In this document: in pieces, positions 11,487 to 58,845 of the stretch
Layout of the letters: each line of letters begins with the position of its first letter
Position numbering within the stretch: position 1 is the stretch's first letter
NCBI GenBank assembly: GCA_001938485.1
Contig: MQRK01234068.1
Span: 103,821-163,015, forward strand
DNA length: 59,195 nt
Origin: Girardia tigrina
Lineage: Eukaryota
Direction of reading: 5' to 3'
Notes under the pieces: generated by a model
What the model saw: the letters and a program-made list of their open reading frames with translations, nothing else
What the model was told of the DNA's origin: nothing
Databases searched by the model: none
Made by a program: the position numbers and the translations under genes

Positions 11487-11500
11487 TAAGTGGATTTTTA

Positions 11501-16103: not shown

Positions 16104-16236
16104 TGGAAGTTTGAGAAAGTCCTTGCCAAGTTTCATTTCTAGAAGAGAATTCGTTTCTCTCAGCCTCCATCAATTATTTTTTTGTTTTTTTATTTATTTT
16201 TTTATTTTTTTTAATCCACTCATCGTCCTTATTCAG

Positions 16237-28431: not shown

Positions 28432-28545
28432 TCAATCTTCCTGATAGACTGTGTTTCGATAATGGTGTTTCCATCCGTTTTCCATTTCAAAAAATTCCAC
28501 CTGATGTCGACCATAGCTTCGCAGACGTTTACGACGCATAGCAAT
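28432..28545 (-). CDS. Mucin terminal exon: cytoplasmic tail IAMRRKRLRSYGRHQVEFFEMENGWKHHYRNTVYQED*
   Basis: CAG acceptor after a 58-bp intron; basic stop-transfer motif; TGA at 28434-28432; AATAAA downstream near 28265. Confidence 0.85.
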   Translation of the reverse strand: MAMRRKRLRSYGRHQVEFFEMENGWKHHYRNTVYQED

Positions 28546-31500
28546 CTGAAATAAATAATTTATCAATTTTTAAAAATTTATAACAAATAAATATTATAAT
28601 TACAGAGATTATGATAAATATCAAGCAAATGAGCACCACAATGGAGAATATCACAATAAGGACAATACCATAAACTGGAAAGGTTGGACTAGGTGCAGTT
28701 GTCGTCGCGAAATCTAAAAAAATCAAAAATAATTATTAAAATTTTCCTACTCACCTTATTTCATGATTGCAGAACAAAATTGTTTAAAAAAAATTTTACA
28801 AGTATACTTCAAAAAAATTAGTTATATAAGGTTGACCAAAAAGTTCTAATACACCAAAGAAAAAAATACATTTTGTTGCAAATACATTAATATACTTGCA
28901 TAATATTATAAATAATTAATTAAATAATTATTAAATAATTAATAATTAGAAATAATTAATATTTTTAACGACTTGTTTATAGATTATTTATTTTGTATAT
29001 TAGGTTTACAAAATACAAAATGAAAATTGACAAAATGGAGTTTCGCGTTTTGATTTGGTACTACCGGAAGCGCAACTTATCAGCAACTGATGATGTAAAA
29101 GAGATATGTAATGCTACAGGCCAGGAAAAAAACAATCATGCTTCAATTAAAAGGTGGCTCAAACGATTTAAATCTCGTGACGTTAAATCAATCCCGTTAA
29201 AAAAAGATCAGTCCAGTTCCGGCCGATCAGCAACAGTGCACTCCAAAGATATGAATGCCCAATTTTTGAGTAGCAGTCGTGAACTGCCAAAAGAAATGTG
29301 TGTTAAGTCACATCAAACAATATTAAATCACTAAGACCAATTGAATTTTTATCCACAAGAAGCCAAGACTAGATTCGCTTTAGCACAAGCTTTCAAAAGA
29401 CAAAAAATTATCCGTGAATTGATCAATAAACCTTCCGATGATCTTTTTTGCAAAATGATTTTTACATCAAATGAAAAGTGGGTTTACCTTGTCAATCACA
29501 ATCGGGACAGGCTTTTGATTCAGAAGGGGCAATAAACGCCGTAAGTTAAGAAGCATAATCAATTCGTTAAAATGATCGTGATTTGCATCAGGTGGAATCT
29601 TGAAGGAATTGTACATTTCGAATTCGTTCCGAATGGTTACTCCCAGTGCTTTTTTTGTAAAAAAATAGGTGCCGGTACTAGGGTGAGCATATTTCTGTTC
29701 TGCCATTCAGGGATGCTATTTTTGAAGTGGACGAACGAGAGTGCCGAAGGCACCTGAGCGCGAGCGTCGAAGACGCTAAGCTGCTCGCGATTAGGGGTTC
29801 TGGGGCGGAGCCCCAGCCGCCAACGCATTTTCAAAATTTCTATTCATTGCGTTTAAAAACAAGCGTGAACTTATTAATAATAATGACGTCACATTACGCA
29901 CGCGTTTATAAATAATGTGGCTGCGTAAGCTCTTTTCAGGTGACGGATGCGTTTTCAATGTGGATATATAATTTTTGACGGCTAAATAACTTGGTCGGCG
30001 TTAATAACGAACACGACCTAAGTATGAGTTATACGCAGTACGTACTAATCGGTACGATGCGAATATTATATTATACTACGGTAGACCATTTTTTACATTA
30101 GTTTTTTTAATGTGTTTAAGTGTTATAGATGCAATTTTAAAATTTCAAATTCCGATTTATCAAAAAATTATTATTATGAAATATGAATAATATAAAAATT
30201 TAAAAATATACATTAAAACACGAAAAAATTATATTTTTTTATTTTTCATCACTTGAAAAAGGTGCCGGTACGCCTCACTGACGATTCGGAAGATGACTCG
30301 GAGCCTCACTTTTCCAATTCCATTTAATCGACCAATTTTCCTTAAACTCAATTTCAAAATTATGCTTTTTTATACTAACAAGAGGCGCATCAGCCTCTTT
30401 TCTGTCGACAGCCGAATTCGATTCGCCTCGTCTGATCACTGGTGGCTGTGTCTCCGATGCAAACACATTTACCACTGTCGGTTTCGAGTCGATCGATTCT
30501 GAATTAATTATTGATTTGTCGATTCCCTTGTGTTTCGATGTGAATTTACAATCACTATTTTCTGCATTCGATAATAAAATCCAATTTTAATGGACTGTCT
30601 CAATTGTGCCAGTACAAACGAACGATTTGCATTTTACGTTCACCCATTTACCGATAAACGAAGCATATTTATCTGGCATATCGGTTTTCTTACGAAAAGA
30701 TTGAAAATAAAACAATAATGAATCAAAAAATACACAAGTTTTCCATTAAAAAAAGTATATTTAAACAAACTCGATTAATAAAAATTTACAATTTGTTTTC
30801 TCTGAGTTACAATTCCAAAAAAATTTTTAACTTTAATTTTTAAAATCACATCTTATTTACATAATATTTTTTGTAATGTTTTTGATTTATTATTTTTTAA
30901 TTAAGAATCATGTGAACTCAAATCGTCCACTATTTAAAGAAGATTAGCTTCTTCCATTTTTTTATTGATAATTCATAAAGTATCGGAACAAAAATCACCA
31001 AATTTATTCCGATTTCGAATTGGGGGAATTTTTGGTCACTACACCATGTAAATCAGAATAATTTGTACTTGAAAATATGAAAGTTTTGTACTTCAATTTT
31101 ATATAAAGTTTCCTGATTGTCTTAACTCTCCTATTTATTTTGAATTAATGGATAATTTTTAAAACTTAAGATATTAAGCATTACACCAAGATATAGGCAC
31201 CAAAACAGTTTTACACATCGGGGACTGAAAAGAAGAACAAAACAGACCCTCAAACGTATGCTTCGATTAACTCTTTTATTAAAATATTTATATAAATAGA
31301 AATAAAAAAATAATTTTAATTAAACTATATTAAATAATAAAAACATGCTTGAATCCAAGTCGTATATAAGATTTTTAATACCACAGTAATTGGCGAAGAC
31401 GTAACGTACCAAATCGATGATTCTATTGTTCCTTGACAACACAACTCGGGTTATTCTTTGTCTCGTTTCTTCGTTTGGTAATTGAAAGATGACGGATTAT

Positions 31501-34500
31501 CCTTGAACGTTCTATGTTTGATGATTACAATTTTAATATTCGGTAAATTGATAATATATTGTCCGGCAATAGGATACGATTCGACGATTAGATGTCTGAG
31601 TCTCGATTCGATAATACTTCGCTCAGCTAACTTGATAAATAATAAAACGGTTCAAACAACACCACTAATGATAGGATTAAAATTCAGTCCAGGACAGATA
31701 ACTTTAAATTACCAAATTTTTATTCATCGATTTTTATTATCGATATTTTTTTAGTAAATTTATATATATAATTTATTATATATAATTAATTTATTATATA
31801 TAATTTAGAAAGAAGAACTATATAAATTTTCTATGGTTTCTATTATATGGTTTCTGTTAGAAAATTATCGAACTTTGTTGTATACCAAACTATCTATAGT
31901 AAGCTAATAACGCATAGAATTAGAGCCCGCCATGTGTCTTAAAACACTCATATTTATTTAACTATTAGTTTGTTGCAAAAGAAATGCAGATTTTTGATTT
32001 TTTTGTATTTATTTTTTGTATTTTTATTATTTATGTTATACGACTAAACATGTATGATGTTGTGAGTCATTCGAAATCTTAATTTATAGTCTTTCAGATA
32101 TATTTGTCTAAAACTTATTATAATGTTTCTTTTTGTAATAATTTCGATTTTAATTGCAGATGTCGAAACGTGATTTTCGCAACATTTACTTCTACGAGTT
32201 CAAGCTAGGGCTTCATGCAGCTAAAACCGATCGAAACATCAACGAAGTTCGGGGCAAGAAAAGTGTCAACGAATGCAAAGTGCAGCGCTGGTATCAAAAG
32301 TTTTGCTCTAGCAATACCAACCTAGAAGATGTACCTCATAACAGCCGCTCATCGACGAATGATAACGATGAATTGAAGGAGCTAGTGGAAGCCGATACTT
32401 GCAAAATTGTTCGAGAACTCACAAAAGAGCTTAACGTTGATTCCTGAACCGTCACTTGGCACTTGAAGCAAATGGGAAGGTTGAAAAAGCTCAATAAATG
32501 GGTGTCTCACAAATTGAACGAAAGTTTAAAAAAATTGTCGTTTGAGAAGTACTGCCTTGAAATTGACATAATGCATCGCGAGTTCCAACATATGTGCTCG
32601 AGATTGGTCAATATGAAGGGGCCAAATCTCCTCTACGCCAACGCTCGGTCACACATCGCAAAACCGATCCTACAAAAACTAAACGAATTAGGCTGCGCAA
32701 CTCTACCTCATCCACCCTACTCACCGAACCTCTCAATCACCAACTACCATTTTTTCAAGCATCTGGACAACTTTCTCCATGAAAAATGATTCAAAAACCA
32801 AGATGACGTCAAAGACACATTTAACGCTTTCATCGCCTCCAGAACTCAGGACTTCTACACCAGGGCATCAATAAACTTGTTTCTCGTTTGCAAAAATGTA
32901 TTGCTTCTGATGGTTTTTATTTCGATTAATAAAGTTTATTCTGTGCTGAGTTACATTTGTTTAAAGTTTATGTTCAAAAACCTGCATTGCTTTTTCAACA
33001 ACCTAATACAATCTTTAAAACATACTTTAGAAATTAACGTTCTTGTGATAACAAAAAAGCTGCCTGTCTGTTTGTAGTTGGACAAATATAGTATGTCCAG
33101 TGTATTTTTAACATAATACATTTTACTTTCTTTATATAGCTGCCGTGGGGCTGATTGTCAAAATCTAGGGGGGTCTTCAAGCGTCTCAGCCCCCTTCCCA
33201 ATTCCGGCACCTATGCTCCAACATAAGAACATTTAAAGGAGTATTACTATAATCATTAATGTTCTCAAAAGTATAGCATAAAATAATTAAATTGCGAATT
33301 ATATTAAAATTATTTCCACTATTTTGAAGAATTTAAAATGATAAGTAATAAAATTTTTCTTACTTATGTCCCCACCAATGTTACTGATAGCATTTTCAAT
33401 TTGAGTTGAGGGTAGGGAAGATTGTACTGATAAATTTGCAATGATACTCCCCTTTCTAAATTTAAAATATTTTAATAAGTAAATAAAATATAAAAATAAG
33501 CACAATCATTTTTTTCTATTTTATTTTATTTTTAAGTATTATTGTTGTAATTTGCTGGAATTTTAATAGAACAACGATAAATGTAATATTGGTTTTAATA
33601 CGGCGTAGAAAAAACTACAATTTAAGGCAAAATATACAATTTTTCGGAGATTAAAATAAATGTTCATTATTGTTTTTTATAAATGTCTAAAATGATACAT
33701 TTATTAAAAATTATTCCATTATTAAGATAAAAAAATTAAAAATATTTTCAAATTTAGTATTAAATGTCGCTTTACCGCAAGAAACTGTGAACAAGTACAC
33801 AATTTACACGTTAAGATTAAAATGTCTCTAAACTCATAACTAGTAAATCAAAAAAAAATCTTAATTCATCCTTTATGCGGACAGCATTCTTCTTGGTCAA
33901 CAGAATTTTTTTGTAATCTTTTGTAGAAGGGAAAATTACTATTACATTTTTAATCAATTTATTATGTTATGAGTAACTATTAAAAGCTTTTTTAGAAGGG
34001 AAAATTTCATACAAAAAAATTACAACTCCATTTTGCAATTAAATAGTTACTTATAACAGAATAAATTTATTATAAAGCATGGAAGGAAAAAAACCAAAAC
34101 ATTTCTTTTTAATACAGTTTAAACATTTTTGGATAATCGTAAAACGTTTTATTGCAAAAGTATTTTTTTGATTTACTAATTTGATCGAATTTTCACATTA
34201 TCATTTATTTTTTATCATTGAGAATGAGTAAAAGTGCAAAGATTAGAGAAAATTGATTGAGTAAAAATTCTTCAAAAATAGGTTTCTAAATTCCATGGAT
34301 AAATTTGCAATGATACTCCACTTTCTAAATTTAAAATATATTAATAAGTAAATAACATATAAAAATATACACATACCTATAGACGTGGGCACGTTTTAAA
34401 ATTTTCTAAACGTTTAAACGGTCTTCGTTTAGCAAATTAAACGTTTAAAAAACGTGTAAATGATCTCTAATTTCATTGATAGACATGGGTACTTTTATAA

Positions 34501-37500
34501 TTTTTTTAAACTTTAAAACGGTCTTCGTTTAGCAAATTAAACGTTTCTTTATTAAAACAGTATGTATCATATACTTCTTTCCAACAATCTAATTCGCAAA
34601 CTGCGATAGAGGTATCTTCCAACACTCAATCATTACACACACAATCACATACATCAACATGTTTTACTTTTTAATGAAGGACACTGATCATCTCTCCTTG
34701 TGATCATGCATCCTCGTTTTCCTGGTCTTTGTCATATGCCAGTCTATAATCTGTAAACATTACTTGTCTAGAGTTTCCTTCATTTGATCTTGTTTCGAAT
34801 TTTTTGATTGCTGACGAAGTCATGAAGATCTTCACCATCCATCTGTTATTCAAATTCAAAGAAGACAAATGCATTGGTTGGAAAATGTCGAAAGAAAGAA
34901 TCACAATCATAATATGTAGCAACATGACCGACAATAATTTGCTGTTAACTTCAAGTCACTGTACATTAAATTTTTTTATTCGGTATTATTCACGTAATAA
35001 TTTAATTGTTTGCTGTTGTATGAAGTGGTGATACACTAATGCAGTGGTTTCCAACCTGTGAAGCGCACCCCCAGGGGGCACGACACTGTTGCAATGGGGG
35101 TATGCAGCTGTTTCCAAAATATCATTTTTGAATACAACCAAAAAAATCGAATAGGTGTCACAAAAAATGAATCAACAATTTTTTTAAAGGGGGACGTACC
35201 AATTTTTTTAAAAGGGGGCACCGGTACAAAAAGGTTGGAAACCACTGCACAAATTTATAATACAACAAATGAAATTGTAATTTGTTCTTACATGAAACTT
35301 TTCTTAAACTTTTTATAAATCAAAATATGGAAAAACTTATCAATTCATTTTATTATAAATGATTATGGTGATAGTGAGCAAACATATGAAGATGTGGAAC
35401 TGTGCATTCGACAAAATTTTGATGACATGGTTTCTGACGGAATCGTATGACCTTGATGTAACAAGCCTTCGCCGACTGAACGGATAACTGAGTATCGTAG
35501 CGACTACAGTACCAGCATAGGCATACCGAGTAACAGAGTAAATCTATTGACTTGTAATTCTAATTATTGAAAATTCGAAATACGAACTTAAGAAATATAC
35601 ACCCGTTTATAAATTGCTAAACGTTTAAACGTCTTAAAAATCGAAAACGTTTAAACGCGAAATTTGCCCACCTCTAGTCCACGAAAAAGCTAAATAGATT
35701 GGGACAATGTGTTCTTTACCAATTAATAGGCCTAAGGCAAACTGATTGAAGTTTCAAAAAAAGTATAACTCATGTTGTGAGTTTTGAAATACAAACTTAA
35801 TATTATACGCTCGTTGAGAAATCGCTAAACGTTTAAACGTTCTAAAAAACGAAAACGTTTAAACGGTCGTTTAAACGCTAAACGTTCCCACCTCTACATA
35901 CCTACATACCTATTTATAGAAAGTAAGCTAATAAAAAGAATGGAAAAATGTGTTAATCGTTTTAATACAAAGGACAAATCATATAAATGTCAGTAATCAT
36001 AATCTTCATTGGTTGTTAATCATAATCGGTCGTTGGTTGCTTAACTTCGGAGATCGGACGAGATCCGACGTACCCAACTGCGGCCATTGACTACTTATTA
36101 TTTATGTTTATTAAAAAATAGTAATCTTATAAAACATCTGTCCAATAAAAATGGTACTTACATTTCGTTCTTTGTGTTTAATGAGTTGTCGAAATAACCA
36201 TTTTTCTTGGTTATTTTTTAAGTTTTAACATGAAAGGCAAAGATTCAATAGAGTCCAATTAAACAGTTAATAATAAAAGCGTTATTAAATCAAGTGTCTT
36301 ATTCGTCTTCGTAGTAATACAACACTGAACTATGGTATTCAGATAGAACTAACTCAATCGATGCAGCAAGAACTACTTTGATAATAACACTATTTTATCA
36401 GATAAAAATATTTTTGCAAAACTTTTAACATTTTTTATGAAAAGAAATGTGAAATTATTAATTAAAATTAATTAAATTTGACCAACATTCTATTTTAAAA
36501 TTTGTAAAATCCTAATTATTAAATAAAAATATCAAAAATGTAATAATACTCACCATTGATATAAAACTATAAATCTAATGTGTGTATGGCATATTGAATT
36601 TAATCAATTTCAATAATATTTATTTTTCGTTTAGGGTATTATGATATTTTAATATATTATATATATTATATTAATATAAAATATTCATAATTTATTAGTA
36701 GATCTTTTTATGCTGTTATTATTCAGGAACTCTGATGGAACAGTTTTGTTCCAATTTTGAGACATTAAACAATTTTTTTGATCAAATTTTCACATTATCA
36801 TTTATTGTCATCGAGAATGAGTAAATATGGAAAGTTTGGAGAATAAGTTTGAATAAAAAGCCTTGAAAAATAGGTTTCTAAATTTAGTCCATTCATTATC
36901 AATAATAAAGTTTAAACATTTATGGATAATCGCAAAACGTTTTTGTGCAAATTTTTTTTTGATTTATTACTTTGATCAAAGTTTTGCATTATCATTTATT
37001 GTCATCGAACATGAGTAAATGTGCAAAGTTTGAAGAAAATTGATTGAGTAAAAAGCTTTCAAAAATAGGTTTCTAAATTCCGTATATATATATATATATA
37101 TCATACCAAAATTTTACATACCAAAAGGGTACATAATTTAAAAGAAGTTACGCTTATTATTTAAATATTATGTTTTTATTCTAATTAACAATATTAAGGT
37201 TTTAATGACTTACGATAGTGAGTAAATGGCTATTAATTCAGAACCTATATTAAGTTGTTGAGCCAATCTAGTTCGGATATCAGTAGTCTTCATCTTGAAA
37301 TCGTCACTGTTAGGATTGGAATATGTGTCTTTCCATTCTTCGTTTGCAAAACGAACGTTATAATTTCTAAATACCCCAGGAGTCGTTGTTCTAGTAATTG
37401 AATCTAAAATACATCAGTAACTTTTTATTAGAAATTTAATTTGTTTAAAAAAATAAACTGAATGAAGTTGATAAAAAGTTTTCATTTCATTTTAATAATA

Positions 37501-40500: not shown

Positions 40501-42049
40501 AAAATTAGTTAATTATTTTTTATAATTTTATGTTTACATAATAATAACTGTTAGGAAATTTGTTTGAATTATCATTATTAAAATTCAGATAAAACACTAA
40601 TTAGAATGATGATAAATAGTGAAAGAACGTCTGAGAATTATGATTACTCAAAATGTAATAGTAATAAATATTTGAAAAGTAATTGTGTCGGTTCTATTAA
40701 CAAAACGCATTTTCTTTAATTTCATGGGGTAAACGCATTTCGAGCTTACTAACGAATCCAAGTTTTCTAAATTATTTTACAACACTTTTTGATTTCTTTT
40801 GTCATCATACCTGAATAAGATTCGATCATGGTTGTTAATTTTATGCTATCAACTTTAGAGGGTCGATCAGACTGTAGTTCATCTTTCAGACCAAATTCTA
40901 CACAAGGAAATTAAGAGACTCCATTTTGAAACTTTGGAAATTTGAAGGAGTCCCTACCATATACAAAAAAATCTTCTTATGAAGTTGTACAGAGATGGGA
41001 AACACGACGAATATGGTTATGTTCATTCTCCATTTCGAATCCAGGAAAAAGTAATAAAAATTGCAGCAAAATCATTTGATACAAACATAGTCTGAAAAAT
41101 TAGATTTGAGAATTTATAATTGAATTTAAATTTTATCACACCTTTCCATATTTTCTAGCTTGTTTTTTGTGTTGGAAGTCATTTAAAGAAACTTGGATTC
41201 GTCAGTAAACTCGATATGTGGTTACCACATGAACTGAAAGAAATTCATTTGGTGAAACATATAGACATTTGCGATTACCTTTTGAAGCGAGAACAAAGTG
41301 ATCCATTTTTGAAACGCTTGATTACGGATGACGAAAAATGGATTGTTTACAACAATGTGGAACACCGACGATCATGGACAAAACGTGGTGAGCCTGCCAA
41401 AATGATCCCAAAAGCAGAAATTCACCAAAAGAAGGTTATGCTTTCCGTCTGGTGGGATTTTAAAGGAATTGTGTTTTTTAAACTCCTTCCGAGGAATGAA
41501 ACCATCAATTCAGACAGATATTATGGTCAGCTGGAGAAATTGGCTCATTCAATTCAACAGGAACGTCCTGAATTGGCAAATCGAAAAGGAGTTGTAATTC
41601 CACATGATAACGCAAGACCACATACAAGTTTGACAACTCGCCAGAAACTCTTATCACTGGGTTGGGAGGTTTTGCCGCACCCACCGTATTCTCCAGACTT
41701 AGCCCCATCGGATTTTCACTTACTTAGATCACTGCAGAATTTCTTGAACAGAAAAACATTAGCCAGTGATGATGACATCAAATCATTCCTAGACGGCTTT
41801 TTTGCTGACAAAGGCAAAGGTTTTTATGAATCAGGAATAATAAAGCTACCGGAAAGGTGGAAGAAAGTGATTGAAAATAATGGACAGTATATCGTGTAAA
41901 AATATTTGTGCATCCATGTCATTTTTTGATAATAAATATTTTAGTAAAAAACACAATGACTTTTTGACAAACCCAATATTTTATTCAATGAATTCGTTTA
42001 TTTATTAATAACGTATAAAATGATAACGATAACACCTTTCTAATAAATG

Positions 42050-42087
<38 letters not shown>

Positions 42088-42137
42088 NNNNNNNNNNNNN
42101 NNNNNNNNNNNNNNNNNNNNNNNNNNNNNNNNNNNNN

Positions 42138-42175
<38 letters not shown>

Positions 42176-45100
42176 CAGATTTTTGTTCTGCACTTAATTT
42201 TACAGATTTATCAACCCTGCATTTGAAGCAGCAAATCCTTTAATCTTAAGATTTGTCGCAATTTTCAAAGCACAATTTTTAAAGTTAGTTCCATTTATTG
42301 GTTTGGCAGATTCCCTCAATTTTCTATAAAACTGAAAAACCATTCCATCAATTTCGTTATAAATTTCTGATTTATGTGAAACTTCTTTAATATTTTTTTC
42401 TGATTGTCTGTATTCTTGAAAAAATATACATGGAGAAAGGCATTTTTTCTACTATATCAGTGATTAAATTTGCACCGTGTTAGAACACAAGAATAATTTA
42501 TAAAGATTTATTTATATCAAAATTCAAAATTGTATACAACACTCCGTTATTAAAACAACACACCATAAATTAATTTAATATTTAATTAAATTAATTTCGA
42601 GAGACTTCAGAAAATTCTAGAACCGATTGTTAATATTGATTTTAATAGATAAGATAAATTATAATAAAGATAATTCCTTACATTCCCCCTCGTTTGAAAA
42701 GTTTTAGACATTCCACATTTCTTCTAATTCTTCTACCGTCTTCACTTTTCAGTTCGTAACTACGATTATGGACCTTATTAATAATTTTAAGCGGTCCTTC
42801 ATATCGGTATGCTTGTTTGGATATGTTCTCTTGCTATACTAGAACTTCATCACCAACTTCAAAGTTTCGGTTGCCTCTATGAGCGGTGCTATAAGTGACT
42901 TTATCCTGATTTATACGTGCTTTCTCAAAGAGATCTTTTTTTTTCTTGTTTATGACTTGCGTTACACCACTGCCGATTTATTTTGAATCCAAAAATGATT
43001 TAAGCTGGGCTCATCTGTATTGCTTTTTGAGTTGTGGCATTCAAACTAAACTCAATTTCCGATAGTAAATCAACCCAATTTTTGTCGCTCTTTAACTAAT
43101 GTTGCATTCATAAAGTCCCTTATGGTTCGGAATTGTCTTTCCACCAGTCCGTTAGTGTTATGGTGGTAAGGACTTGAAAACTGTAATTTTATATTATACT
43201 TCTGTCCCATTAATTTCATCAAGTTAGATCCGAAACTTTTACCACAATCGACGTGAATTATTCTTGGTGCAACAAACTTCAGTATCCAGTTTTTTACTAT
43301 TGTTTTTAATGTCGTTTCTTTTTTAATGTATTAACAAAGTTTTAATATAAATTAAATATAAAAATATTCAAATAAAATTTCAATTTATTGTAAATCAAAT
43401 TAAAACAGACTAATTTAAATATCACCAAAAAGGGGTTTTGAAATTTGTAATTACAGAAATGTTTAATTATATAACAAATGATAATAAAATAAAATATAAG
43501 AATCAAATAATTTTTCATTTATATATTTAAAACTATTATTAATCATATTTATTTTACTTGTTGAAGTCGTCGTTGAACTCGAAGTAGAAGAAGATGCGGC
43601 ACTCGCATTTTGGGTGACACTACTTGACGATGTAACTAAAATAAAAAAGTTTAATGTTTTAAAAATATAAATTAAATAGGTTAGGTTTCTATCATATATT
43701 TATGATATGCTGCACATTAAGGTGCCAACTGGCCTTTCGGGTGTCCCAGTCAAAGTTTGAGGATATTGTGGTTCCTTTTTTCCCTACCATGCTTTTCCCA
43801 ATGACTTATGAGGAAATAAACGAATTTGATTTCAAATGTGCAACGTATTTGAATACACTTCTTTTTACAAATAGAAAATGCTTTTGGGCAAACATAAAAG
43901 GTTTGTTTTTTATTTTTTGTTTTAAATTTTTGATGATTTTTTAAAAACTTTAAGCATGACAGTCCAAAAATGCAAATAGACTGAGACATATGTAAAATAT
44001 GTATTTGGATTTATTTTTGGTAGAAACATGATGCGGAAGCATCAATACTCATTATGTGCGCAAAGGTTCTTGTTCCAGATTTGAATTAATAAAAAAATAA
44101 GAAATAATTAACATTGAAATTGGAATTTTGCATTCCAATTCATTAAAATTATATGATATATTTATATAGATATATGTATATATTTTATATTAAAAATTTA
44201 AAATTGGTTTAAAATTCGTTTTGTTTAAACGAATTAATTTATGTTAGTTTTTTGATAACCAATAAAGAAAATCGATTGCCTTGTTTAATTGTCTAATTTA
44301 ATTGTCTAAATGGCTAATTTAAAACAACAGATAATTTTACCTTTTGACTCTATTTTTAACGTGGATAATTTTATAAAGACAAGTGGAGGCATTCACGATC
44401 ATTGGAATGAATTTATGCGATATTTACAAAANNNNNNNNNNNNNNNNNNNNNNNNNNNNNNNNNNNNNNNNGATCCTGATGAACCAAACAGAGAAACGGC
44501 AAATTATTTGGTGTCAAAATTTCTGAAAGTGAATTCGAATCTTGGGAAACTGTTTCGACCAGATTATCTCATCGGTGGTTCCTCAAGGACTTCTTTTAAT
44601 TGTGAAAGATATACGGCCCTCTTCAGGGCCATAAATCGTGATTGGAAAGTAGAGACGGAATGGATAAAAACAGTTCTCAACGATTATTTTGAAACTTTCC
44701 AGACTAAAAATATGAGTACTAAATTAGCTTGCCTCCTACAAGTTATTTTGGATTTATTTGATAGAAAACTTTACCATTTGAATTGGATTGAAACGATTCT
44801 GACACTACCAATTCTGACTACGAAACCATTATATTACACAATGTTAATTTTACACTTAAACTTGATTTATGCGGTCCATTTTAATGCAATTATTTATTTT
44901 GCGATCTTATTCATAATTTTTGAGTATGATATCACACAAAAAATAACTCAAAAATTTCGCAAAAATAAAAATCGCATTAAAAAGAATCGCATAAAAACAG
45001 GTTTGAGTGTATTTTCATTTTTCTGTGTATATAATTGTCCAATGTTACCCCTAATGATTATAAGCTTGTTTGTGTTCGTATTGTCCTCCAAGCACTCTCT

Positions 45101-51100: not shown

Positions 51101-54100
51101 GATTAGTTTATCATTCTGTTTATTTGTTTTTAGCTGTGTTTTCTAATAGTAATTATAATAATTATTAACATTGTTAGTTCTATTTTCTCATTTTTAAATA
51201 AATATTTAATGATGATTCATTGTAAAACTAGAATCCGAATTTCTTAAACATAAGAAACAAAAATATGTAATTTTCCTTAATCGATATATTCGATGTACCT
51301 GAAGTAACACTTCGGGTCCCCCCTTAAACCTCTTGCCTACGAATATCTCTAACACAATATTAATTAAATATTATTAATTATTTAAATATATTTATTTATC
51401 TCTTGGTTGATAACTTTACTTGAAATTGAAGTAAAATATATAAATTGGTTTTGTAAAACTCAACTACATCACTTGTTTATTATATCTAATAATTGTTATA
51501 ATTTTTTAAACTGACTCACTATAAGAACTCGTAGTATTAGTTACATTTGCAGACGGAATGTTGGCTGAAAAAAAACATTATTTTTATATTTTTATGATAC
51601 AAATTGAATAAATTCACATGAGCTACTTATTGAGACGTATGTTGATGTTGATGCACTGACAGGGGACCCTAAATATGCAAATATTATTTTAAAAACAGTT
51701 AACATTTCATTAAAAAGGAAGTAGATTATCTTTTATTTAGAAAATAAAAAGCGTACTTGTATCGTTGCTGGCTGAGCTACTTGATGTTGAAGTATTTGTG
51801 GATACTGCTAAAATAATATGAAAAATTAGAACGTATTTCTTCTGTCTCAAAATAAACTTACATGTTAAATTGTTAGGGAAACTACTTGCTGTCGATATAT
51901 TAGTATATGATGCTAAATATTATGTTTCGAAATTAAATCATTGGTATTAAAAAGATATAATATTTACATGTGTTATTATTAACAGAGCTACTAGCAGTAA
52001 TAGGCCCTAAAAATATTAAAATATGGTAAACAATATAATAAATATATAAAAATTATTATTCAAAACATGAATACATCATTTTACAAAAAAATATTTTAAT
52101 TATTATCGCAAATAATTTCGATGGTACAACCGTCATCATCAGTTCAACAAGAAAAATATGAATTCTATTCTGCTTATTAATTTCGCAATCAATGAATAGT
52201 TATGTAATCTAAACACAATCAATAATGAATGAAATTTGAGAAAGCCGTTGACGATTTAATTTTAGTATATAAAGATATAATAAATATGGCTTTCAAGACG
52301 TACAAAATCGAGGAAAGCTAGTATGTTATTAGAGTCAGTATGAATTGTGAACTCAGTCATTAAACTCAAAAACGGTTCTATATAAAATTCCTCTTTAAAT
52401 ACGAAAGAAAACATCGTTCTTATAAACTAAAGATTTATTTCCTGTGAATAAATCAATTTTTTCTTCAGATTGCATAAAAATAGATACCAAAGTAGGTTTT
52501 AAAAGTGACCCTATGGTTACTTATTGTCGAACACAAATGATAAATCCTTTGTAGAAAATACCAATAGATGTTGCAACATCTTTGGCTTCAACTTTATATC
52601 TTGTGTTTTACTTATTACATTACCTCTCTCATTTCACAAACCACTTACCAATTCTGATGCATCATCAATTAGAACATCTGTAAACAAACTTTTTGCATCA
52701 AATGATACCATCCTCTATATGAGAAGTGGTTGCAACGTCTATATCAGAATTCATTTTTTTTAAACACCAAAATTTATTACTATAACAATTCACATTTCTA
52801 AAACAAATTTTCCTGTTAATTTAATTTAATTATCNNNNNNNNNNNNNNNNNNNNNNNNNNNNNNNNNNNNNNNNNNNNNNNNNNNNNNNNNNNNNNNNNN
52901 NNNNNNNNNNNNNNNNNNNNNNNNNNNNNNNNNNNNNNNNNNNNNNNNNNNNNNNNNNNNNNNNNNNNNNNNNNNNNNNNNNNNNNNNNNNNNNNNNNNN
53001 NNNNNNNNNNNNNNNNNNNNNNNNNNNNNNNNNNNNNNNNNNNNNNNNNNNNNNNNNNNNNNNNNNNNNNNNNNNNNNNNNNNNNNNNNNNNNNNNNATA
53101 TGTTTTTGTAATTTTTAGAATATTAGAAGTATAGTTTTACTCTTTCTGCTTAAATACACTTAATTTTGATTAATTCAGCACCTTTAATTAGGTTGCGGCT
53201 ACAACCGTCATGGCGCGAGCGGACTCTAGACACTATGTAATGGGACGATGGCGGCTATAACAGCAAAAATTTAAAAACGTAAATGACAGGTTTAATGACT
53301 GAAATAAACAATTTTTTGTGAGCAACAAAGTATTTTTNNNNNNNNNNNNNNNNNNNNNNNNNNNNNNNNNNNNNNNNNNAAATAAATGACAAATAAATTT
53401 ATTATAATTTTATAATTATTATACATTATTTTCGGTATGCCATGTTTCAAAGCATGGTGCAGGACATTGCATACTAAATTTTTTTTCGAAAACATGACAC
53501 TAGGCTTCTACTTGTACGCTGGTAAATGCACATTTGTGCTGCTACAGCCGCAGTGTCTAAAAACGACCGTTTCGTATTGGACGGCTATTGCCGTCATGTC
53601 ACATAGTGAACTTGAACTTGACGGCTATAGACGCAACTGTCCGTCAACGTGTTAAAATATTTAATAAGCAAATTAATATAAAAATATTTTACCCTTTAAA
53701 TTAAAAAATAATAAACTATTCAGGCGAGATAAAAATTTAAAATTAACCCCTCATACTCTACTTTTCAATCGTTACAGATTGACCCAAAAATAAAGTTTTT
53801 TTACATTTTAATTAGTATATTTCATTTTACATTATTTCAAAAATTTTAACAATATTTCTTAATTCCTCAAAAGTATATTGAAATCAAGTCAAAATTAACT
53901 TACCAATTGTATTATTACTTACAAAGGCACTTGCAACTGAAAATTAAATTAAATTAAAAAAATATACGTAGATAGTGAATATACAAGTAAATGATTTAAT
54001 ATCTCTTCTTTTCTAAATCATAAGTTCATAAAGACTTGTATAATAAAGGATATTTCTAAATATATTATTTTGTTAGAGTCTAAATATTAAAGAGGACATC

Positions 54101-57100
54101 TTGTGCAATATATCACATAATATGTAACCGAGCATGTGTAACTGACTTAAAATAATTTCTTCTGTACATCATAAATTTATAAAAAATATTATTTAAACTC
54201 AAAACCTTTAAGCTGCTTTCAAACATCCGGTTTTCTTAGTCCCTGAGTTTTTCCAGAGAACTGGCGCAAAGATCAAGGTGCTGATCTACTAATCGGGGGT
54301 TATTATTTTCCGTTATAAAGAGCTATTAAAGAGATAAGAAGGAAGACATAATGATCCAGGTTAATTTCATTAGGTTTGACTTGCCTTGTAGGAATATCAA
54401 CATCGAAAGTAACTTCAGAAAAAAACAAAATTTATCAAAACTTTGGATTATTCAGAAATGATATTAGACGGTCTGTTACAAACGAATCTATTTATAACTG
54501 TGTATGTTTATTTTTCTAAAATTTTTAAAAATAATTTAATAATATGATTTTTAATAATACATAATAAAAAATAATGACAAATTTTTCTAAAAAATTAATA
54601 AACTTTTTTTTCGGAAAATACTATTGTTTCTATTGATTCCGGTCTTTTACCGAGTATTTCTGTCACTCTCCTCCAGACAAAGTCGTTTGTTTTCTTTTAT
54701 TTCCACGTGATCTTCAGCATTCCCCTATGTCACTTCATTTCAAACGCTTTAAGTCTATCCATGCTCTTCTGATTTATTGTCGAACTCTCTGGCTGGCAAT
54801 TTATTTTTTGAAATTTATTGTTGATTTGACGGTGGTTATTTTATCGATTGATTTGAAATTCATTGGGGATTTAAAATAGTGATTTATTTTTTTGATCAAC
54901 TGAAACCATTACTGAAATTATGTGAGTAAATATTAGAAGAAGTTTGATCGTAAAAAGGAGGGGAGGGGAAGAAAATTAAATAATCTCGTCAGAATTCGAA
55001 CAAAATATCGTTGAAAACTCCAAAAGTCGAGAACCAGATGACGAGTTTTATACGCACAAACATAAATAAATATATCGATTTCTAAATCGCCGACCTTGAA
55101 ATAGTTCTTTACTATACCACTGGATTTTCCGTAAACAAGGATTCTGAGGAGATCACAGCAAAGAACTATCGAACAGAGCATGAAGCGCCTCGATTATTGA
55201 GTCGAGTGATATCTTCGAAATTCATCCTTCATGATTCCGGCGAGACTTCGTTAACGCACTGCAACGCTTCGGATTCAAAATTTTCCAACAAAAACCAATG
55301 GCTTCTGTTGCAGACTGTTTCCGTCTCTGAAAAATCATGTTTTATGAAAATCTCTTGTCATCTGTGGAAGCCAATGGTGGTCGATTCTTCCCATGGATGA
55401 ACTCCCAGATTCTGGCTACTGTGTCGATGTTAAAAGCCGGAGATGATACTGACCTATGTGTTTTTGCTTATATGTCCCCGGAAACCGCTGAGAGGAGATC
55501 TTTGGACTTGGAGAGCTTCGAGGGAGTTCGACAAACGAAAAAAACCGAGTTTATCGACGAGGGCTGTCTCGGAGTTGAAATGGTTCCAAATTCAGGTGAG
55601 ATGCCATTAGATCTTTTCCCGACGACTCGCAAACCACCACCTTTGTCATTGCGCAACTGCCACGTGAAGCCCGTTCTCACACCAACATAAGATTTGTTTA
55701 AAAAATAAATTTTTAATCTTTGAAACGATTTTCTTCTGTAGAACAATATTTTATTTTGAAATATATATGAACCAAACAAGAACAATATATTTCAAAATCA
55801 AAGGAATATGGACCAAGTATCTCAATCTTTACAGCAGTTCTCTTGAGAAACTCAGAGACTGCCAAAACACGCTCTAAAGAACCTCTTGGTTAATCTCAAA
55901 TTCATTGATGAAAATAAATAGGGTTTTTTAGTGGAAATGAGAAACTAAAATTATGTAAATTGAAATATGCAATTTTCAATACATTTAGAACTATGTTTAT
56001 AAATTCTTAAACATTTAATAATTCATTTTTTTCAATAATTTAAATTTGTATATTTTTACAAATATACCGTATTTACAACTGTGCACTGTGTCTTCTAAAA
56101 TTACTACTAAGACTACAATGTACAAAAGTTAAGGGTGGAAATAATTGAAAGGGTATCGGTTACCTAATGTATTATTTTAAGACGAGTATTATATACTAGA
56201 AAAGGACCTACCATATATGGCAGGTAAGCTGCATTTTCATTTTTGAAATTTTCCGTTTTATTATTTATATAATTATTCTATTCTTTATCAGTTTTATTTA
56301 CATCATTTTTTAGATAACATTATTTATTATCATTTTAATTCATTAATAGTTATTAGAATGTCTACTTACAACTATAAGTAGAATGAATAAACGATTTTGA
56401 CCGAATCCGTCAGTCAATCAAGATCATTTAGGCTATTATATATTAATTAAATTATTTTTGTTTATTTAAAATTTCGATGGAATAACCTTGAAATTACAAA
56501 AAATTCCAATATCGACAAATAAATTATTCGATTTTTTTTAAATCAATAAAAATCCTTTTAGAAAGTATCGAAACAGAAATATAATTTAAAATTCAAGAAA
56601 TATTAAACTTTGAAAGAATAATTTAATATCTTTTGACAAAATATATATTTTTTATTTTGACGAGTAAAACAAAAAAATGAATATTTCTATTTTTTTTAAA
56701 AAAACTTTCTTTTTCTTTCTTATTTTTGAGATCCGTTATTTTGAATATATAATGAAATATAATATACCAATGAAAAGTTTGATGAAATTAATTAATTTTT
56801 CTAGAATTTCAAAAATTTATATTTGGAAAAAATACATACTTTATATTATAATAAATGTAATTTAATATAAAAGTTAGTTTTAATTATAATTATAATCGAA
56901 TTTACTTAAAATGAAAATTCTCACTTGAAGAATTTGTAGAATTGGTTAAGTCAGATGTCACGACACTCGGAGAAGGGGCTGAAGGAATATTATAAAATAA
57001 AACAAATTAATTATTTTTAAATATTTTTATTTTTGTATTAGTCTTCAATTTTTTGTATTTATTCCTTTTATATTAAAAGAATCTATTCGAATATTTACAA

Positions 57101-58845
57101 ATAAAAATGCAATATAAGTAAATAATTGAACAATTTGTTTTGTGAAAACCGATTGCTTGAAGAGAATTTAAATTATTGTTATAAAAATGATATCTTTGAA
57201 GTATATATTTATCGGTAGGGTACAATTTACGTAGAGCATTAAAACTTGATTCAGATTTTAAAAAAATAAACAAAAATTTAAAAAAACGTTAATTGTTGTG
57301 AACGTTTATATATATTAAAAAATGAGGTCTTTAAATTCGACATCCTCTTCTGCACGGATTAAGGAAGAAATTATAGTTTTTGAGATTATATTCAGTAAAA
57401 TACGATACATATTCTATCTGTAGATCGCAATACTTATTTTTCTATTGATCCAGAATAAATTATAAAATTGCTTAGTTTATTTGTGCACACGCAATATTCG
57501 TTTAATGCGGTTAATATGTTCCTCAAGAACAAGTAGTAAAGGGAAACCACGTTAATCGAAATCATCTTTTTATATGTAGCGTATCTTAACTCAAATACAG
57601 CATCCATATAATAATATATTTTGACGATGTTGGAAAACAAGTATTATCTTACCGATTTTTTTTAATTTAACTCAAAATGAGATTTTTTAATGTTAGAATT
57701 TACTTTCTAAACGGGTTTGACTGTAATCCTTTTGTAAATATAAAAGCATTTTCTACAATAATTAGTTAACTTCAGGCAATATTTTCTACTGAGAAGTTCA
57801 ATTGAGAGTGCATTTTTTGTAATATTTGCCGTAAGAACATGCTATAAATATTGTTTATTTACTAAATATTTTAATGTTATAAAATTAAAATAATTAAATT
57901 TTTATTAAACTCATTTAGAATTTTCACGTCCCAATAAAAAGATTTTATAATCTTCTACAAAAATATACAACATTCAATTCTAATAAAATTTATTTTCCAT
58001 AAAAACGAAGTTATAATGGCCTCATTCATTGTGTTTGTTTTATATTAATAATTTTGTATCCTTTTATAAAACATTGAAAAGTTTCAATAAAAAATTATAA
58101 TTTTCTTTTTGTTCATACAAAGAAAAGACAGGAAGAGATATAGTGAAGCAGAAGTGCCCGTTTGGTACATAAATAAATTCGCCGCATGCATCGGCCCTAA
58201 AGCGTCACTCATCACTTGGGTGAACGTCTCCGGAAGAAGGTCCACCCTGGTTATTGCCAAACGATGTTCATTAATAAATTTTCGTACCAACAATTTGTAA
58301 ACCAACAAACCCTTGAACACTAGTTAGCAGTCAATTTCATAAATGACAATTTTCACTAAATTTTAGTTTCAAAGCCCCCTCAGTAATTTAGCACCGTACG
58401 CTTATTATCTTTTTAACATTCTTTTTTGATTTTTCAGAGGTCAACAGTTTGCTAGAAATTAATATTTAAAAAAATTTTTATATAAAAAAGACACAAAACT
58501 CCTAAAAATGCTTCAAGATAAACTTCCTGGACCTTTATGATCAGAAAAAATAAGTTTACCTAAATGGAAATTTCATTGTGAATCTCATTATATATTTTTT
58601 GTGTTTGGCGTAAAACTTCTTGTACGAACCATATAATAAATGGTGAAAGTCTATAAAAATTAGTATTCACAACTTTTACTGTTCACGAAACACCGAAGAA
58701 TTTATTTTTTTTAAATTTTAGTGAAGTTTATTTAAACTAAAATTAATTTAAATCTTTTTCGGTCATACAAAAATATTAAAATTTTTAACGAGATATAATA
58801 AAAAATACTTACAACTGGTGCTGTTCACGGACACCGTAGAATTCG
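28432..58845 (-). CDS. Multi-exon type-I transmembrane SEA-domain mucin (>=14 exons, ~342 aa visible; 5' end not found in the window)
   Basis: Exons (minus, all GT-AG, phase-consistent): 58845-58813, 56978-56925, 53936-53904, 52006-51968, 51912-51862, 51807-51757, 51668-51618, 51564-51520, 43635-43558, 40897-40811, 37403-37214, 33455-33364, 28713-28604, 28545-28432. The joined frame is open: S/T stalk, SEA domain, TM helix, RRKR tail, stop. Confidence 0.85.
28604..28713 (-). CDS. Mucin transmembrane exon (FATTTAPSPTFPVYGIVLIVIFSIVVLICLIFIIIS)
   Basis: TAG acceptor, GTAAT donor, phase 1 to 0; hydrophobic segment of more than 20 residues. Confidence 0.88.
28827..29640 (+). mobile_element. Decayed mariner, 3'-truncated
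   Basis: TIR-like taaggttgaccaaaaagt; MEFRVLIWYY, IFTSNEKW and ICIRWNLEGIVHFEFVP motifs. Confidence 0.85.
29667..30272. repeat. Non-autonomous repeat bounded by direct aggtgccggtac copies, with GC-rich ggggcggagccccagcc core
   Basis: Terminal 12-13-bp direct repeats and a GC-rich core typical of MITE-like repeats. Confidence 0.5.
30275..30679 (-). pseudogene. Chimeric pseudo-ORF: Sm/LSm-like N-terminus joined to an LTR-retroelement-like segment
   Basis: MPDKYASFIGKWVNVKCKSFVCTGTIETVH*NWILLSNAE... continues in frame into FEIEFKENWSIKWNWK; one internal stop. Confidence 0.35.
31965..33006 (+). mobile_element. Internally deleted mariner with both TIRs
   Basis: TA-flanked TIRs ttagtttgttgcaaaagaaatgcag / ctgcattgctttttcaacaacctaa; YEFKLG, WVSHKL and HPPYSPNLSITNY motifs; central part of the DDD domain deleted. 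Confidence 0.92.
33364..33455 (-). CDS. Mucin SEA exon 2 (KGSIIANLSVQSSLPSTQIENAISNIGGDI)
   Basis: TAG/GTAAG boundaries, phase 2 to 1, matching exon 37403-37214; GSII corresponds to the SEA GSVV-type motif. Confidence 0.88.
34380..35896. mobile_element. hAT-type non-autonomous element with nested copies
   Basis: TIRs tagacgtggg / cccacctcta with 8-bp TSD CATACCTA (34372-34379 and 35897-35904); a second TIR pair inside (~34479 and ~35676); Tigger fragment (KMSKERITIIICSN) at ~34850-34930. Confidence 0.85.
35042..35247. mobile_element. Small hAT (Charlie-like) MITE
   Basis: TIRs cagtggtttccaacct / aggttggaaaccactg; degenerate 8-bp TSD (cactaatg / cacaaatt). Confidence 0.85.
36025..36091 (-). 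pseudogene. Truncated 5S rRNA-derived sequence (5' half)
   Basis: Minus strand reads GTCAATGGCC...GGATCTCGTCCGATCTCCGAAGTTAAGCAAC, matching the conserved 5S 5' half and box A; the 3' half is absent. Confidence 0.75.
36765..37082. repeat. Locally repeated ~175-bp intronic unit (copies ~36765-36883, ~36909-37082, ~34117-34294)
   Basis: Shared cacattatcatttatt...gagaatgagtaaa...aaaataggtttctaaatt. Confidence 0.75.
37214..37403 (-). CDS. Mucin SEA exon 1 (DSITRTTTPGVFRNYNVRFANEEWKDTYSNPNSDDFKMKTTDIRTRLAQQLNIGSELIAIYSL)
   Basis: TAG/GTAAG boundaries, 190 nt, phase 1 to 2; W-x3-Y-x-NPNS-x2-F pattern of the SEA N-terminal half. Confidence 0.88.
38312..39832 (-). mobile_element. DD41D (rosa-type) Tc1/mariner element with TIRs and an internal rearrangement
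   Basis: TIRs cagggtgatcataaagtaactaccg at both ends; IFSDESIFHLNG and FQQDGA...PARSPDLAPLDYF motifs with 41 residues between the last two D. Confidence 0.92.
39864..40314 (+). mobile_element. Helitron-like non-autonomous element or remnant
   Basis: Inverted copies of tattataaaagcccaagtcactcactg (~39864-39905 and ~40206-40260); 3' hairpin ggccgcgaagcgggcc followed by CTAG|T at 40311-40315. Confidence 0.6.
40811..40897 (-). CDS. Mucin phase-1 exon (87 nt; KFGLKDELQSDRPSKVDSIKLTTMIESYS)
   Basis: TAG acceptor and CAG|GTATG donor, open in phase 1; less S/T-rich than the other exons, so less certain. Confidence 0.6.
41170..41978 (+). mobile_element. 5'-truncated mariner (DD34D) with an uninterrupted catalytic-domain ORF (41216-41899)
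   Basis: WLPHEL, ITDDEKW, HDNARPH and HPPYSPDLAPSDF motifs; right TIR ...gactttttgacaaacccaa followed by TA. Confidence 0.95.
42180..42480 (-). mobile_element. Tigger/pogo CENP-B HTH remnant
   Basis: EIDGMVFQFYRKLRESAKPINGTNFKNCALKIATNLKIKGFAASNAGL. Confidence 0.7.
42531..43320 (-). mobile_element. Gypsy LTR retrotransposon 3' end (integrase fragment, PPT, short LTR)
   Basis: IIHVDCGKSF...SSPYHHNTNGLVERQFRTI integrase motifs; polypurine tract GAGGGGGAA followed by a TG...CA segment (42682-42531). Confidence 0.85.
43558..43635 (-). CDS. Mucin S/T exon (78 nt; ITSSSSVTQNASAASSSTSSSTTTST)
   Basis: TAG/GTAAA boundaries, symmetric phase 1. Confidence 0.85.
44680..45790 (-). mobile_element. Decayed Penelope-like RT remnant
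   Basis: MVSFEIFSLFKNV and YKK*VDDIFLLF motifs on the minus strand; boundaries approximate. Confidence 0.7.
46790..47620 (-). mobile_element. Decayed mariner
   Basis: DIRTVIKYEFLRG...VSNWFSKFVKGNFNL and GIPRELHE motifs. Confidence 0.8.
48203..48576. mobile_element. Mutator (MULE)-type MITE
   Basis: ~45-bp imperfect TIRs (ggtaaataggcgattcgcctaat...), 9-bp TSD ATTTCAAAG (48194-48202 and 48577-48585), internal gttagggttaggg and (AAT)n. Confidence 0.8.
48966..49921. repeat. ~180-bp near-perfect inverted repeat pair (48966-49146 and 49742-49921), foldback-like
   Basis: Arms read as reverse complements with only a few mismatches. Confidence 0.85.
49925..50970 (+). mobile_element. Decayed mariner remnant(s)
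   Basis: VFLDFHGIV, FLQDNA and APTDFYLFIHLKKHLR motifs. Confidence 0.7.
51520..52006 (-). CDS. Cluster of five mucin microexons (39, 51, 51, 51 and 45 nt)
   Basis: GPITASSSVNNNT / SSYTNISTASSFPNNLT / SVSTNTSTSSSSASNDT / RSPVSASTSTYVSISSS / SNIPSANVTNTTSSY; introns of 55, 54, 88 and 53 bp, all GT-AG, all phase 1. Confidence 0.88.
52290..52790 (-). mobile_element. Penelope-like RT fragment
   Basis: RMVSFDAKSLFTDV and FVFDNK motifs on the minus strand. Confidence 0.7.
53904..53936 (-). CDS. Mucin microexon (33 nt; IASAFVSNNTI)
   Basis: CAG/GTAAG boundaries, symmetric phase 1. Confidence 0.75.
54640..54800 (-). mobile_element. RTE LINE post-RT fragment
   Basis: TINQKSMDRLKAFEMK...MLKITWK*KKTNDFVWRRV motif. 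Confidence 0.6.
56925..56978 (-). CDS. Mucin microexon (54 nt; SPSPSVVTSDLTNSTNSS)
   Basis: CAG/GTGAG boundaries, symmetric phase 1. Confidence 0.82.
58671..58704 (-). pseudogene. Dead duplicate of microexon 58813-58845
   Basis: Aligns with the upstream exon, but has a 1-nt insertion and has lost the AG acceptor; the GT donor is retained. Confidence 0.7.
58813..58845 (-). CDS. Mucin microexon (33 nt; xNSTVSVNSTS)
   Basis: CAG/GTAAG boundaries, symmetric phase 1, two NST sequons. Confidence 0.82.

What the first reader, a model, noticed from the sequence alone, without database searches (positions are those of the whole stretch)
28432..58845. Hidden 30-kb SEA-mucin gene whose stalk is built from symmetric microexons (micro-exon-gene-like architecture)
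Seen: ten consecutive minus-strand exons of 33, 54, 33, 39, 51, 51, 51, 45, 78 and 87 nt. All are multiples of 3, all phase 1-1 with GT-AG ends, and nine encode non-repetitive S/T/N-rich peptides. They are followed by a two-exon SEA domain (GSII), a TM exon and an RRKR tail. The stalk exons are too short for the ORF track. Known: vertebrate membrane mucins (MUC1-type) usually encode the stalk as a tandem-repeat block in one large exon, whereas symmetric microexon arrays are the hallmark of schistosome micro-exon genes, which vary by exon skipping. Inference: a surface glycoprotein whose stalk length and glycan load could be tuned combinatorially by splicing, in a gene automated annotation may well fragment.
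Basis: partly seen in the sequence, partly recalled or inferred. Interest (0 to 1): 0.85.

Follow-up and report, generated by a model that had tools for sequence, protein, structure and literature searches.

The report
Planarian membrane mucin with microexon stalk
This is a real, expressed flatworm gene for a sugar-coated cell-surface protein of the MUC1 type whose stalk is stitched together from about fifteen tiny in-frame exons; the layout resembles the micro-exon genes of parasitic flatworms, but only one spliced form was seen.

Summary
The gene is real; the combinatorial-splicing idea is not supported so far. Nine of the ten claimed stalk exons exist (33, 54, 33, 39, 51, 51, 51, 45, 78 nt; all phase 1-1). 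RNA contigs from four runs (2 studies) join the exons from 53936 to 51520 at the predicted GT-AG ends; the two 2013 runs extend the chain to all nine. No 87-nt tenth exon was found. The genome is a dugesiid planarian. The gene extends about 30 kb beyond the window to a signal-peptide exon: 21 exons, 470 aa, with a 286-aa stalk (56% Ser/Thr, 26 sequons), a split SEA domain (GSII; best hit newt MUC1), one TM helix and a 37-aa tail. The stalk is partly repetitive: one 33-nt exon occurs three times and a 54-nt exon twice, with flanking intron, so it grew by exon duplication. No exon-skipping joint appeared, although contigs drop rare forms. Other SEA mucins in this genome use large stalk exons. 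The gene passes a loose operational MEG filter but fails the classical 6-36-nt criterion; CD46 and nepmucin are vertebrate precedents. The scan noted part of this array on this window only.

The parts
58813..58845 (-). Stalk microexon, 33 nt, phase 1-1, 2 sequons; third copy of a 33-nt exon (other copies lie upstream of the window)
   Evidence: Its exact 33 nt lie between the two 54-nt copies in RNA contigs of X21 and X22 (table 5c); duplicates
56925..56978 (-). Stalk microexon, 54 nt, phase 1-1; second copy of a 54-nt exon
   Evidence: table 8 (0 mismatches; the upstream copy has 3)
53904..53936 (-). Stalk microexon, 33 nt, phase 1-1
   Evidence: Joint 52005/53903 in four runs, crossing two N gaps
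51968..52006 (-). Stalk microexon, 39 nt, phase 1-1
   Evidence: Joints on both sides in four runs
51862..51912 (-). Stalk microexon, 51 nt, phase 1-1
   Evidence: Joints on both sides in four runs
51757..51807 (-). Stalk microexon, 51 nt, phase 1-1 (a tandem acceptor 3 nt further in is possible but not used in the contigs)
51618..51668 (-). Stalk microexon, 51 nt, phase 1-1, no internal sequon
51520..51564 (-). Stalk microexon, 45 nt, phase 1-1
43558..43635 (-). Last stalk exon, 78 nt, phase 1-1, 76% S/T
   Evidence: The loose end of the X21 and X22 contigs at 51520 is the first 30 nt of this exon; its 3' junction was not observed directly
37214..37403 (-). SEA domain exon 1, 190 nt, phase 1 to 2
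   Evidence: Pfam SEA E=0.073, the only hit; best phmmer hit newt mucin-1 E=2.7e-7; aligns with SEA paralogs in this genome
33364..33455 (-). SEA domain exon 2, 92 nt, phase 2 to 1, begins with K-G-S-I-I (predicted autoproteolysis site G/S)
   Evidence: same intron position and phase as four paralogous loci; no Pfam hit on its own
28604..28713 (-). Juxtamembrane and transmembrane exon, 110 nt, phase 1 to 0
   Evidence: Hydropathy peak at residues about 410-432; junctions predicted, not observed
28432..28545 (-). Cytoplasmic tail exon (RRKR stop-transfer, 37 aa, TGA)
   Evidence: single copy in the genome
28366..28431 (-). Probable short 3' UTR: ATTAAA, then a CA, then a U-rich tract
   Evidence: Sequence; inference from 86 leftover letters in RNA contig X21 record 9
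34298..34373 (-). Dead partial duplicate of the acceptor and first about 27 nt of SEA exon 2 (93% identical; runs into a repeat and a stop)

Best explanation
A single-copy planarian type I membrane mucin of the MUC1 kind. Shown: transcription, and splicing of the stalk exons from the upstream 33-nt copy through to exon 43635. Predicted from sequence: a cleaved signal peptide, a 286-aa Ser/Thr/Asn-rich stalk, a SEA domain, one TM helix and a short tail. Inferred from known SEA mucins (own knowledge): the stalk is densely O- and N-glycosylated and extends as a bottle-brush in the surface glycocalyx; the SEA domain cleaves itself at G/SII and holds the stalk non-covalently, so it can be shed under shear. 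The microexon layout is best read as the way the stalk grew: every stalk exon is phase 1-1, so duplicating an exon with its flanking intron lengthens the stalk in frame, usually by one or two sequons. In bulk RNA the exons are included together as one dominant isoform.
For: Exact joints, one unbroken contig per run, four runs, two studies. Open 470-aa frame with signal peptide, stalk 56% S/T and 26 sequons. SEA homology to newt mucin-1 and to paralogs, with the same phase-2 intron before xGS[IV]. Exon duplicates with 72-93% identical intron flanks, and both copies present in one transcript. A further dead duplicate of SEA exon 2. 14 of 15 symmetric exons carry an internal sequon.
Against: The junctions from 43558 to the SEA, TM and tail exons, and those among the first six exons, were not observed directly. 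The SEA halves score below the Pfam cut-off when searched apart. Two hints of branching near the duplicated unit: the X22 contig begins exactly at the first base of the upstream 33-nt copy, and the X1 and X4 contigs show no second 54-nt copy. Glycosylation, cleavage and tissue are inferred only.
Confidence: 0.72

Rival explanations
1. The same mucin, but with regulated skipping of some stalk exons (CD46- or CD45-like), giving a few cell-type-specific stalk lengths that are minor in whole-animal RNA.
For: All 15 stalk exons can be skipped in frame. The X22 contig starts exactly at an exon boundary, and X1/X4 lack the second 54-nt copy. The exon at L005:9859 has in-frame alternative donors at 30, 63 and 69 nt. 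Precedents: PMC2118878, PMC2118321.
Against: No skipping joint among exons 53936-51520 in four runs, at contig depth up to about 450. The boundary hints can also come from low coverage or allelic differences.
Confidence: 0.3
2. A true MEG-type system: many combinatorial isoforms made by near-random skipping, to diversify a surface protein, as in schistosomes.
For: Passes the operational MEG filter of Olson et al. 2020: 21 exons, 13 under 70 nt and divisible by 3, a run of 11 (PMC7653826). The host is a flatworm. Some schistosome MEGs are membrane-anchored, O-glycosylated and mucin-like (PMC5825161).
Against: Unbroken single contigs. Only 9% of the CDS lies in exons of 36 nt or less. The gene is single-copy. 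It carries a folded SEA domain.
Confidence: 0.1
3. The stalk array and the SEA-TM part are two genes or misjoined pieces across the gap at 42088-42137.
For: The junction 43558/37403 was not directly observed; the gap is flanked by TA repeats.
Against: Phases match. The SEA, TM and tail exons are single-copy and have no other signal peptide. The X21 contig runs on for 670 nt after exon 51520, which fits 584 nt of exons to the stop plus a short UTR and poly(A).
Confidence: 0.04

Closest known systems
MUC1-type SEA-domain transmembrane mucins (best hit: mucin-1 of Lissotriton helveticus, XP_078526568.1)
   Same: Signal peptide, S/T stalk, membrane-proximal SEA with a GS-hydrophobic motif, one TM helix, basic stop-transfer, short Tyr-containing tail
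   Different: The stalk comes from 15 symmetric small exons rather than a tandem-repeat exon; it is unusually rich in N-glycan sequons and poor in Pro (3%); the TM lacks the VPGWGIAL start seen in MUC1 and in one planarian paralog
Other SEA mucins of this genome (contigs C222418, C202569, C221916, C244238 and look-alikes)
   Same: SEA split by a phase-2 intron just before xGS[IV]; phase-1 entry into the SEA or stalk exon where it could be traced
   Different: Their stalks lie in large exons of about 330 to over 790 nt, two of them fused to SEA exon 1
Micro-exon genes (MEGs) of schistosomes and tapeworms
   Same: Run of symmetric small exons behind a signal peptide; flatworm host; passes the Olson 2020 filter
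   Different: Exons are 33-102 nt rather than 6-36 nt (mostly 15); folded SEA domain; single copy; free-living host; no isoform ladder seen
CD46 STP exons and nepmucin
   Same: A mucin-like S/T segment of a type I membrane protein encoded in separate exons (a 15-aa STP segment in CD46)
   Different: There the skipping is demonstrated and only 2-3 exons are involved; here there are 15 exons and skipping was not seen

Membership tests
SEA-domain transmembrane mucin (MUC1 type) | N-terminal signal peptide | tested here: met
   Met-Lys-Lys, a hydrophobic core and a small-residue site in an exon at L006:9548-9490; hydropathy peak at residues 3-5. By eye and hydropathy only; its junction was not observed.
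SEA-domain transmembrane mucin (MUC1 type) | Long S/T-rich extracellular region | tested here: met
   286 aa, 34% Ser, 22% Thr, no Cys; exons spliced
SEA-domain transmembrane mucin (MUC1 type) | SEA domain | tested here: met
   Exon by exon: Pfam SEA E=0.073 (below cut-off), top two phmmer hits are multi-SEA proteins (E=2.7e-7 and 7.4e-6), alignment with paralogs. The joined domain was not searched.
SEA-domain transmembrane mucin (MUC1 type) | GS-hydrophobic cleavage motif | tested here: met
   GSII at the start of SEA exon 2; actual cleavage not testable here
SEA-domain transmembrane mucin (MUC1 type) | Single TM helix and cytoplasmic tail | tested here: met
SEA-domain transmembrane mucin (MUC1 type) | Tandem-repeat (VNTR) stalk in one large exon | tested here: not met
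   No coding tandem repeat; longest repeated word in the CDS is 29 nt, from exon duplication. So it is filed as a SEA membrane mucin-like protein, not as a MUC1 ortholog.
SEA-domain transmembrane mucin (MUC1 type) | Heavy O-glycosylation and apical location | not testable with these tools
   Needs protein work
MEG, operational filter (Olson et al. 2020) | At least 7 exons, at least half under 70 nt and divisible by 3, run of at least 4 | tested here: met
   21 exons, 13 micro, run of 11
MEG, classical (schistosome) | About 80% of the coding region in symmetric exons of 6-36 nt | tested here: not met
   9% in exons of 36 nt or less; 47% in symmetric exons up to 81 nt
MEG, classical (schistosome) | Signal peptide; secreted or membrane-anchored | tested here: met
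MEG, classical (schistosome) | Many isoforms by exon skipping | tested here: inconclusive
   No skipping joint in four runs, but only contigs were available and they drop rare forms
MEG, classical (schistosome) | Sequence similarity to a MEG family | not tested
   No MEG sequences were compared; low-complexity 10-30 aa exons cannot be searched usefully one by one

The most novel reading that the evidence does not exclude
A free-living planarian already runs a MEG-like system: a SEA mucin whose 15 in-frame stalk modules, almost all carrying one or two N-glycan sites, are skipped in many combinations by cell type or condition. The micro-exon architecture of parasitic flatworms would then derive from ancestral surface-mucin stalk exons.
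Probability: 0.12. Interest if true: 0.75.

Novelty: new variant of a known kind. Interest (0 to 1): 0.4.

Why it matters
It is a worked example of a mucin stalk that grows by duplicating small phase-1 exons rather than by expanding a tandem repeat, next to paralogs in the same genome that use the ordinary large-exon design. The papers found here report micro-exon genes only from parasitic flatworms; a gene in a free-living planarian that passes the same filter shows that the layout alone is not a mark of parasitism and gives a tractable (RNAi-accessible) test case. No paper in the library mentions SEA-domain mucins in planarians. The value is moderate because skipping was not seen and vertebrate stalk-exon precedents exist.

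Tried and rejected
87-nt exon: four open candidates, all with negative acceptor scores, the best inside a mariner-like relic. A length of 671 nt with such an exon also fits the 670 nt left in contig X21 record 9, but that would end the contig one base short of the stop; 584 nt plus UTR and poly(A) fits an ATTAAA/CA/U-rich site, so this is not decisive. Extra exon 30498-30376: lies in a high-copy repeat. Duplicated 33+54 unit as an assembly artefact across the 1465-N gap just outside the window: rejected, both copies are in one RNA contig in genomic order. The search for homologous proteins with SEA exon 1: nothing, uninformative because of the length limit. PDB sequence search: nothing. AlphaFold of half a SEA domain without alignment: pTM 0.42, uninformative, not used. 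BLASTP of single SEA exons against one MUC1 repeat: no significant alignment. Rfam: no match in the window. DeMarco 2010 is not held. Species name not established by papers. As the operators asked, the spliced model was searched exon by exon only; the joined protein was built inside scripts for frame, composition and hydropathy and was never searched or folded. N gaps were not filled.
Full report
Host. The window is G000:C234068:103821-163015 of a 1.43-Gb assembly in 255,254 contigs. An intronless PIWI gene from the same assembly is 89% identical to PIWI-2 of Schmidtea mediterranea and 74% to a Dugesia japonica PIWI, so the animal is a dugesiid planarian. The assembly size recalls Girardia tigrina, but that is memory and was not confirmed.

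Observation. Reading the minus strand and scanning for open AG/GT exons rich in Ser/Thr gives nine phase 1-1 exons: 58845-58813, 56978-56925, 53936-53904, 52006-51968, 51912-51862, 51807-51757, 51668-51618, 51564-51520 and 43635-43558. The other five strand/phase classes give 0-1 rows each. Downstream lie 37403-37214 (phase 1 to 2), 33455-33364 (2 to 1, starting K-G-S-I-I), 28713-28604 (TM) and 28545-28432 (RRKR, stop). The tenth exon of 87 nt was not found. The four open candidates have negative acceptor scores, and the best one lies in a mariner-like repeat with inverted ends.

RNA evidence and gaps. Logan contigs of four runs (at most three samples, two studies; 'RNA' is the tool's guess, but the contigs are spliced) were laid on 51400-57100. 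All four show the joints 51564/51618, 51667/51756, 51807/51862, 51912/51968 and 52005/53903 with CT..AC ends, one contig per run, at depths 6.3, 3.6, 38 and 454. No differing letter is listed in the in-window exons. The last joint crosses the gaps 52835-53097 and 53338-53379. In X21 and X22 the contig continues from 51520 into the first 30 nt of exon 43635, crossing gap 44432-44471. Upstream it reads: a variant 33-nt exon, a 54-nt copy with three differences, exon 58845, exon 56978. The 72 letters between exons 56978 and 51912 in the record equal 33+39. Gap 42088-42137 and the SEA, TM and tail junctions were outside the laid stretch and were not observed. They rest on matching phase, on the single copy of those exons and on contig length: 670 nt remain where 584 are needed to the stop.

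The gene beyond the window. Upstream DNA holds eight more exons on the minus strand: L006:9548-9490 (signal peptide, phase 0 to 2), L006:8120-8038 (83 nt, 2 to 1), L005:9859-9791 (69 nt, weak donor, alternatives at 30 and 63 nt), L005:6704-6666 (39), 6116-6015 (102), 4571-4539 (33), 3989-3957 (33) and L004:4751-4698 (54). Only the last two are seen in RNA; the rest are predictions that leave 234 nt of leader in the X21 contig. The model has 21 exons over 60 kb and one open frame of 470 aa: signal peptide, 286-aa stalk (34% Ser, 22% Thr, 12% Asn, no Cys, 26 sequons), SEA from residue 304 with GSII at 368, TM at about 410-432, and a 37-aa tail. The joined protein was used only inside scripts; all searches were exon by exon.

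The stalk grew by exon duplication. The 33-nt exon at 58845 has copies at L005:3989 (98% with flanks) and L005:4571 (77%). The 54-nt exon has a copy at L004:4751 (93%). The introns around them match at 72-93% over hundreds of bases. Both 33+54 units are in one transcript, so this is not an assembly artefact. A dead duplicate of the acceptor and first 27 nt of SEA exon 2 sits at about 34324. Fourteen of the 15 symmetric exons carry an internal sequon.

SEA identity. SEA exon 1 gives Pfam SEA as its only hit (E=0.073). Against 1.84 billion proteins its best hits are multi-SEA proteins, the first being mucin-1 of a newt (E=2.7e-7). A 61-aa metagenome fragment (38% identical) ends at the same phase-2 donor and is probably an ortholog from a soil animal; its contig is too short to show a stalk. 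A loose Pfam search of the genome finds other SEA genes. They share the phase-2 intron before xGS[IV], but where a stalk could be traced it lies in exons of about 330 to over 790 nt, two of them simple Thr-rich repeats fused to SEA exon 1. The microexon stalk is thus special to this gene among those found; the search gives a lower bound.

How it most likely works. Shown: transcription and ordered splicing of the stalk exons. Predicted: type I topology. Inferred from MUC1-type mucins (own knowledge): dense O-glycans on Ser/Thr runs plus N-glycans stiffen the stalk; SEA cleaves itself at G/SII and keeps the halves together until force or a protease sheds the stalk; the protein serves in the surface coat of an epithelium. 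Tissue and partners are unknown. Symmetry of the exons is sufficiently explained by growth: once the flanking introns are phase 1, only duplications of 3n exons keep the frame.

Combinatorial splicing. It was not seen. An abundant skipped form should break the contig or appear as its own joint, and joints with sides of 21-30 nt are listed elsewhere in the same output. Contigs drop rare variants, so minor or cell-specific skipping stays open. Two weak hints point to branching near the duplicated unit: the X22 contig starts exactly at the first base of the L005:3989 exon, and X1 and X4 show no second 54-nt copy. Low coverage or allelic differences could explain both.

Comparison with known systems. 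By the filter of Olson et al. 2020 (PMC7653826) the gene counts as a micro-exon gene: 13 of 21 exons, a run of 11. By the classical description, about 80% of the coding region in exons of 6-36 nt (PMC5825161), it does not: 9%. MEGs are described as restricted to flatworms and as secreted or anchored (PMC4350168), and some are mucin-like, so the resemblance is real but is one of layout. In mammals, CD46 varies by a 15-aa S/T/P segment (PMC2118878) and nepmucin by mucin-domain exons (PMC2118321), so stalk exons of this kind are not new in themselves. No paper in the library joins planarians and SEA domains.

Verdict. A real, expressed SEA membrane mucin with an unusual, duplication-built microexon stalk: a new variant of a known kind, interest 0.4. 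The scan's only related note on this array is from the same window (s1-692026); it was not found on other DNA.

Noticed in passing
window 10890-11516 (-): Intronless achaete-scute-like bHLH gene (Pfam HLH E=9e-16; 79% to an unnamed UniParc protein), 17 kb downstream of the mucin on the same strand.
   Followed up: partly
L025:4133-4261 (contig C244238): A SEA-mucin paralog whose TM helix starts VPGWGIAL as in vertebrate MUC1 (64% identical over 25 aa to newt mucin-1): a better MUC1-like candidate than the gene studied here.
   Followed up: partly
contigs C195103, C244238, C221916, C202569 (L022-L031): These SEA paralogs have a 33-39 nt phase 1-1 candidate exon after SEA exon 2, probably the last SEA strand; the gene studied here has no such candidate.
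   Followed up: partly
window 34298-34373 (-): Dead partial copy of the SEA exon 2 acceptor and 27 coding nt, 870 nt upstream of the real exon; a possible decoy splice site.
   Followed up: partly
window 15437-17067 (+): Unit with inverted ends, twin similar hairpin-like segments near 15941-16109 and an orphan 190-aa ORF at 16292-16864; no Rfam match, no convincing Pfam hit. Noted earlier by the scan (s1-691944, s1-691974).
   Followed up: no
window 7122-8237, 23705-24553, 41216-41899, 22815-23450: Tc1/mariner, pogo-like and LINE remnants; 7122-8237 is a near full-length DDE_3 transposase frame.
   Followed up: no
L019 (JGI 3300031718): Metagenome contig with an ortholog-like SEA exon 1 and the same phase-2 donor; source organism unknown.
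   Followed up: partly
window 48966-49146 and 49742-49921: 181-bp inverted repeat, 98% identical, about 600 bp apart, in the intron after exon 51520; probably a recent non-autonomous element.
   Followed up: no
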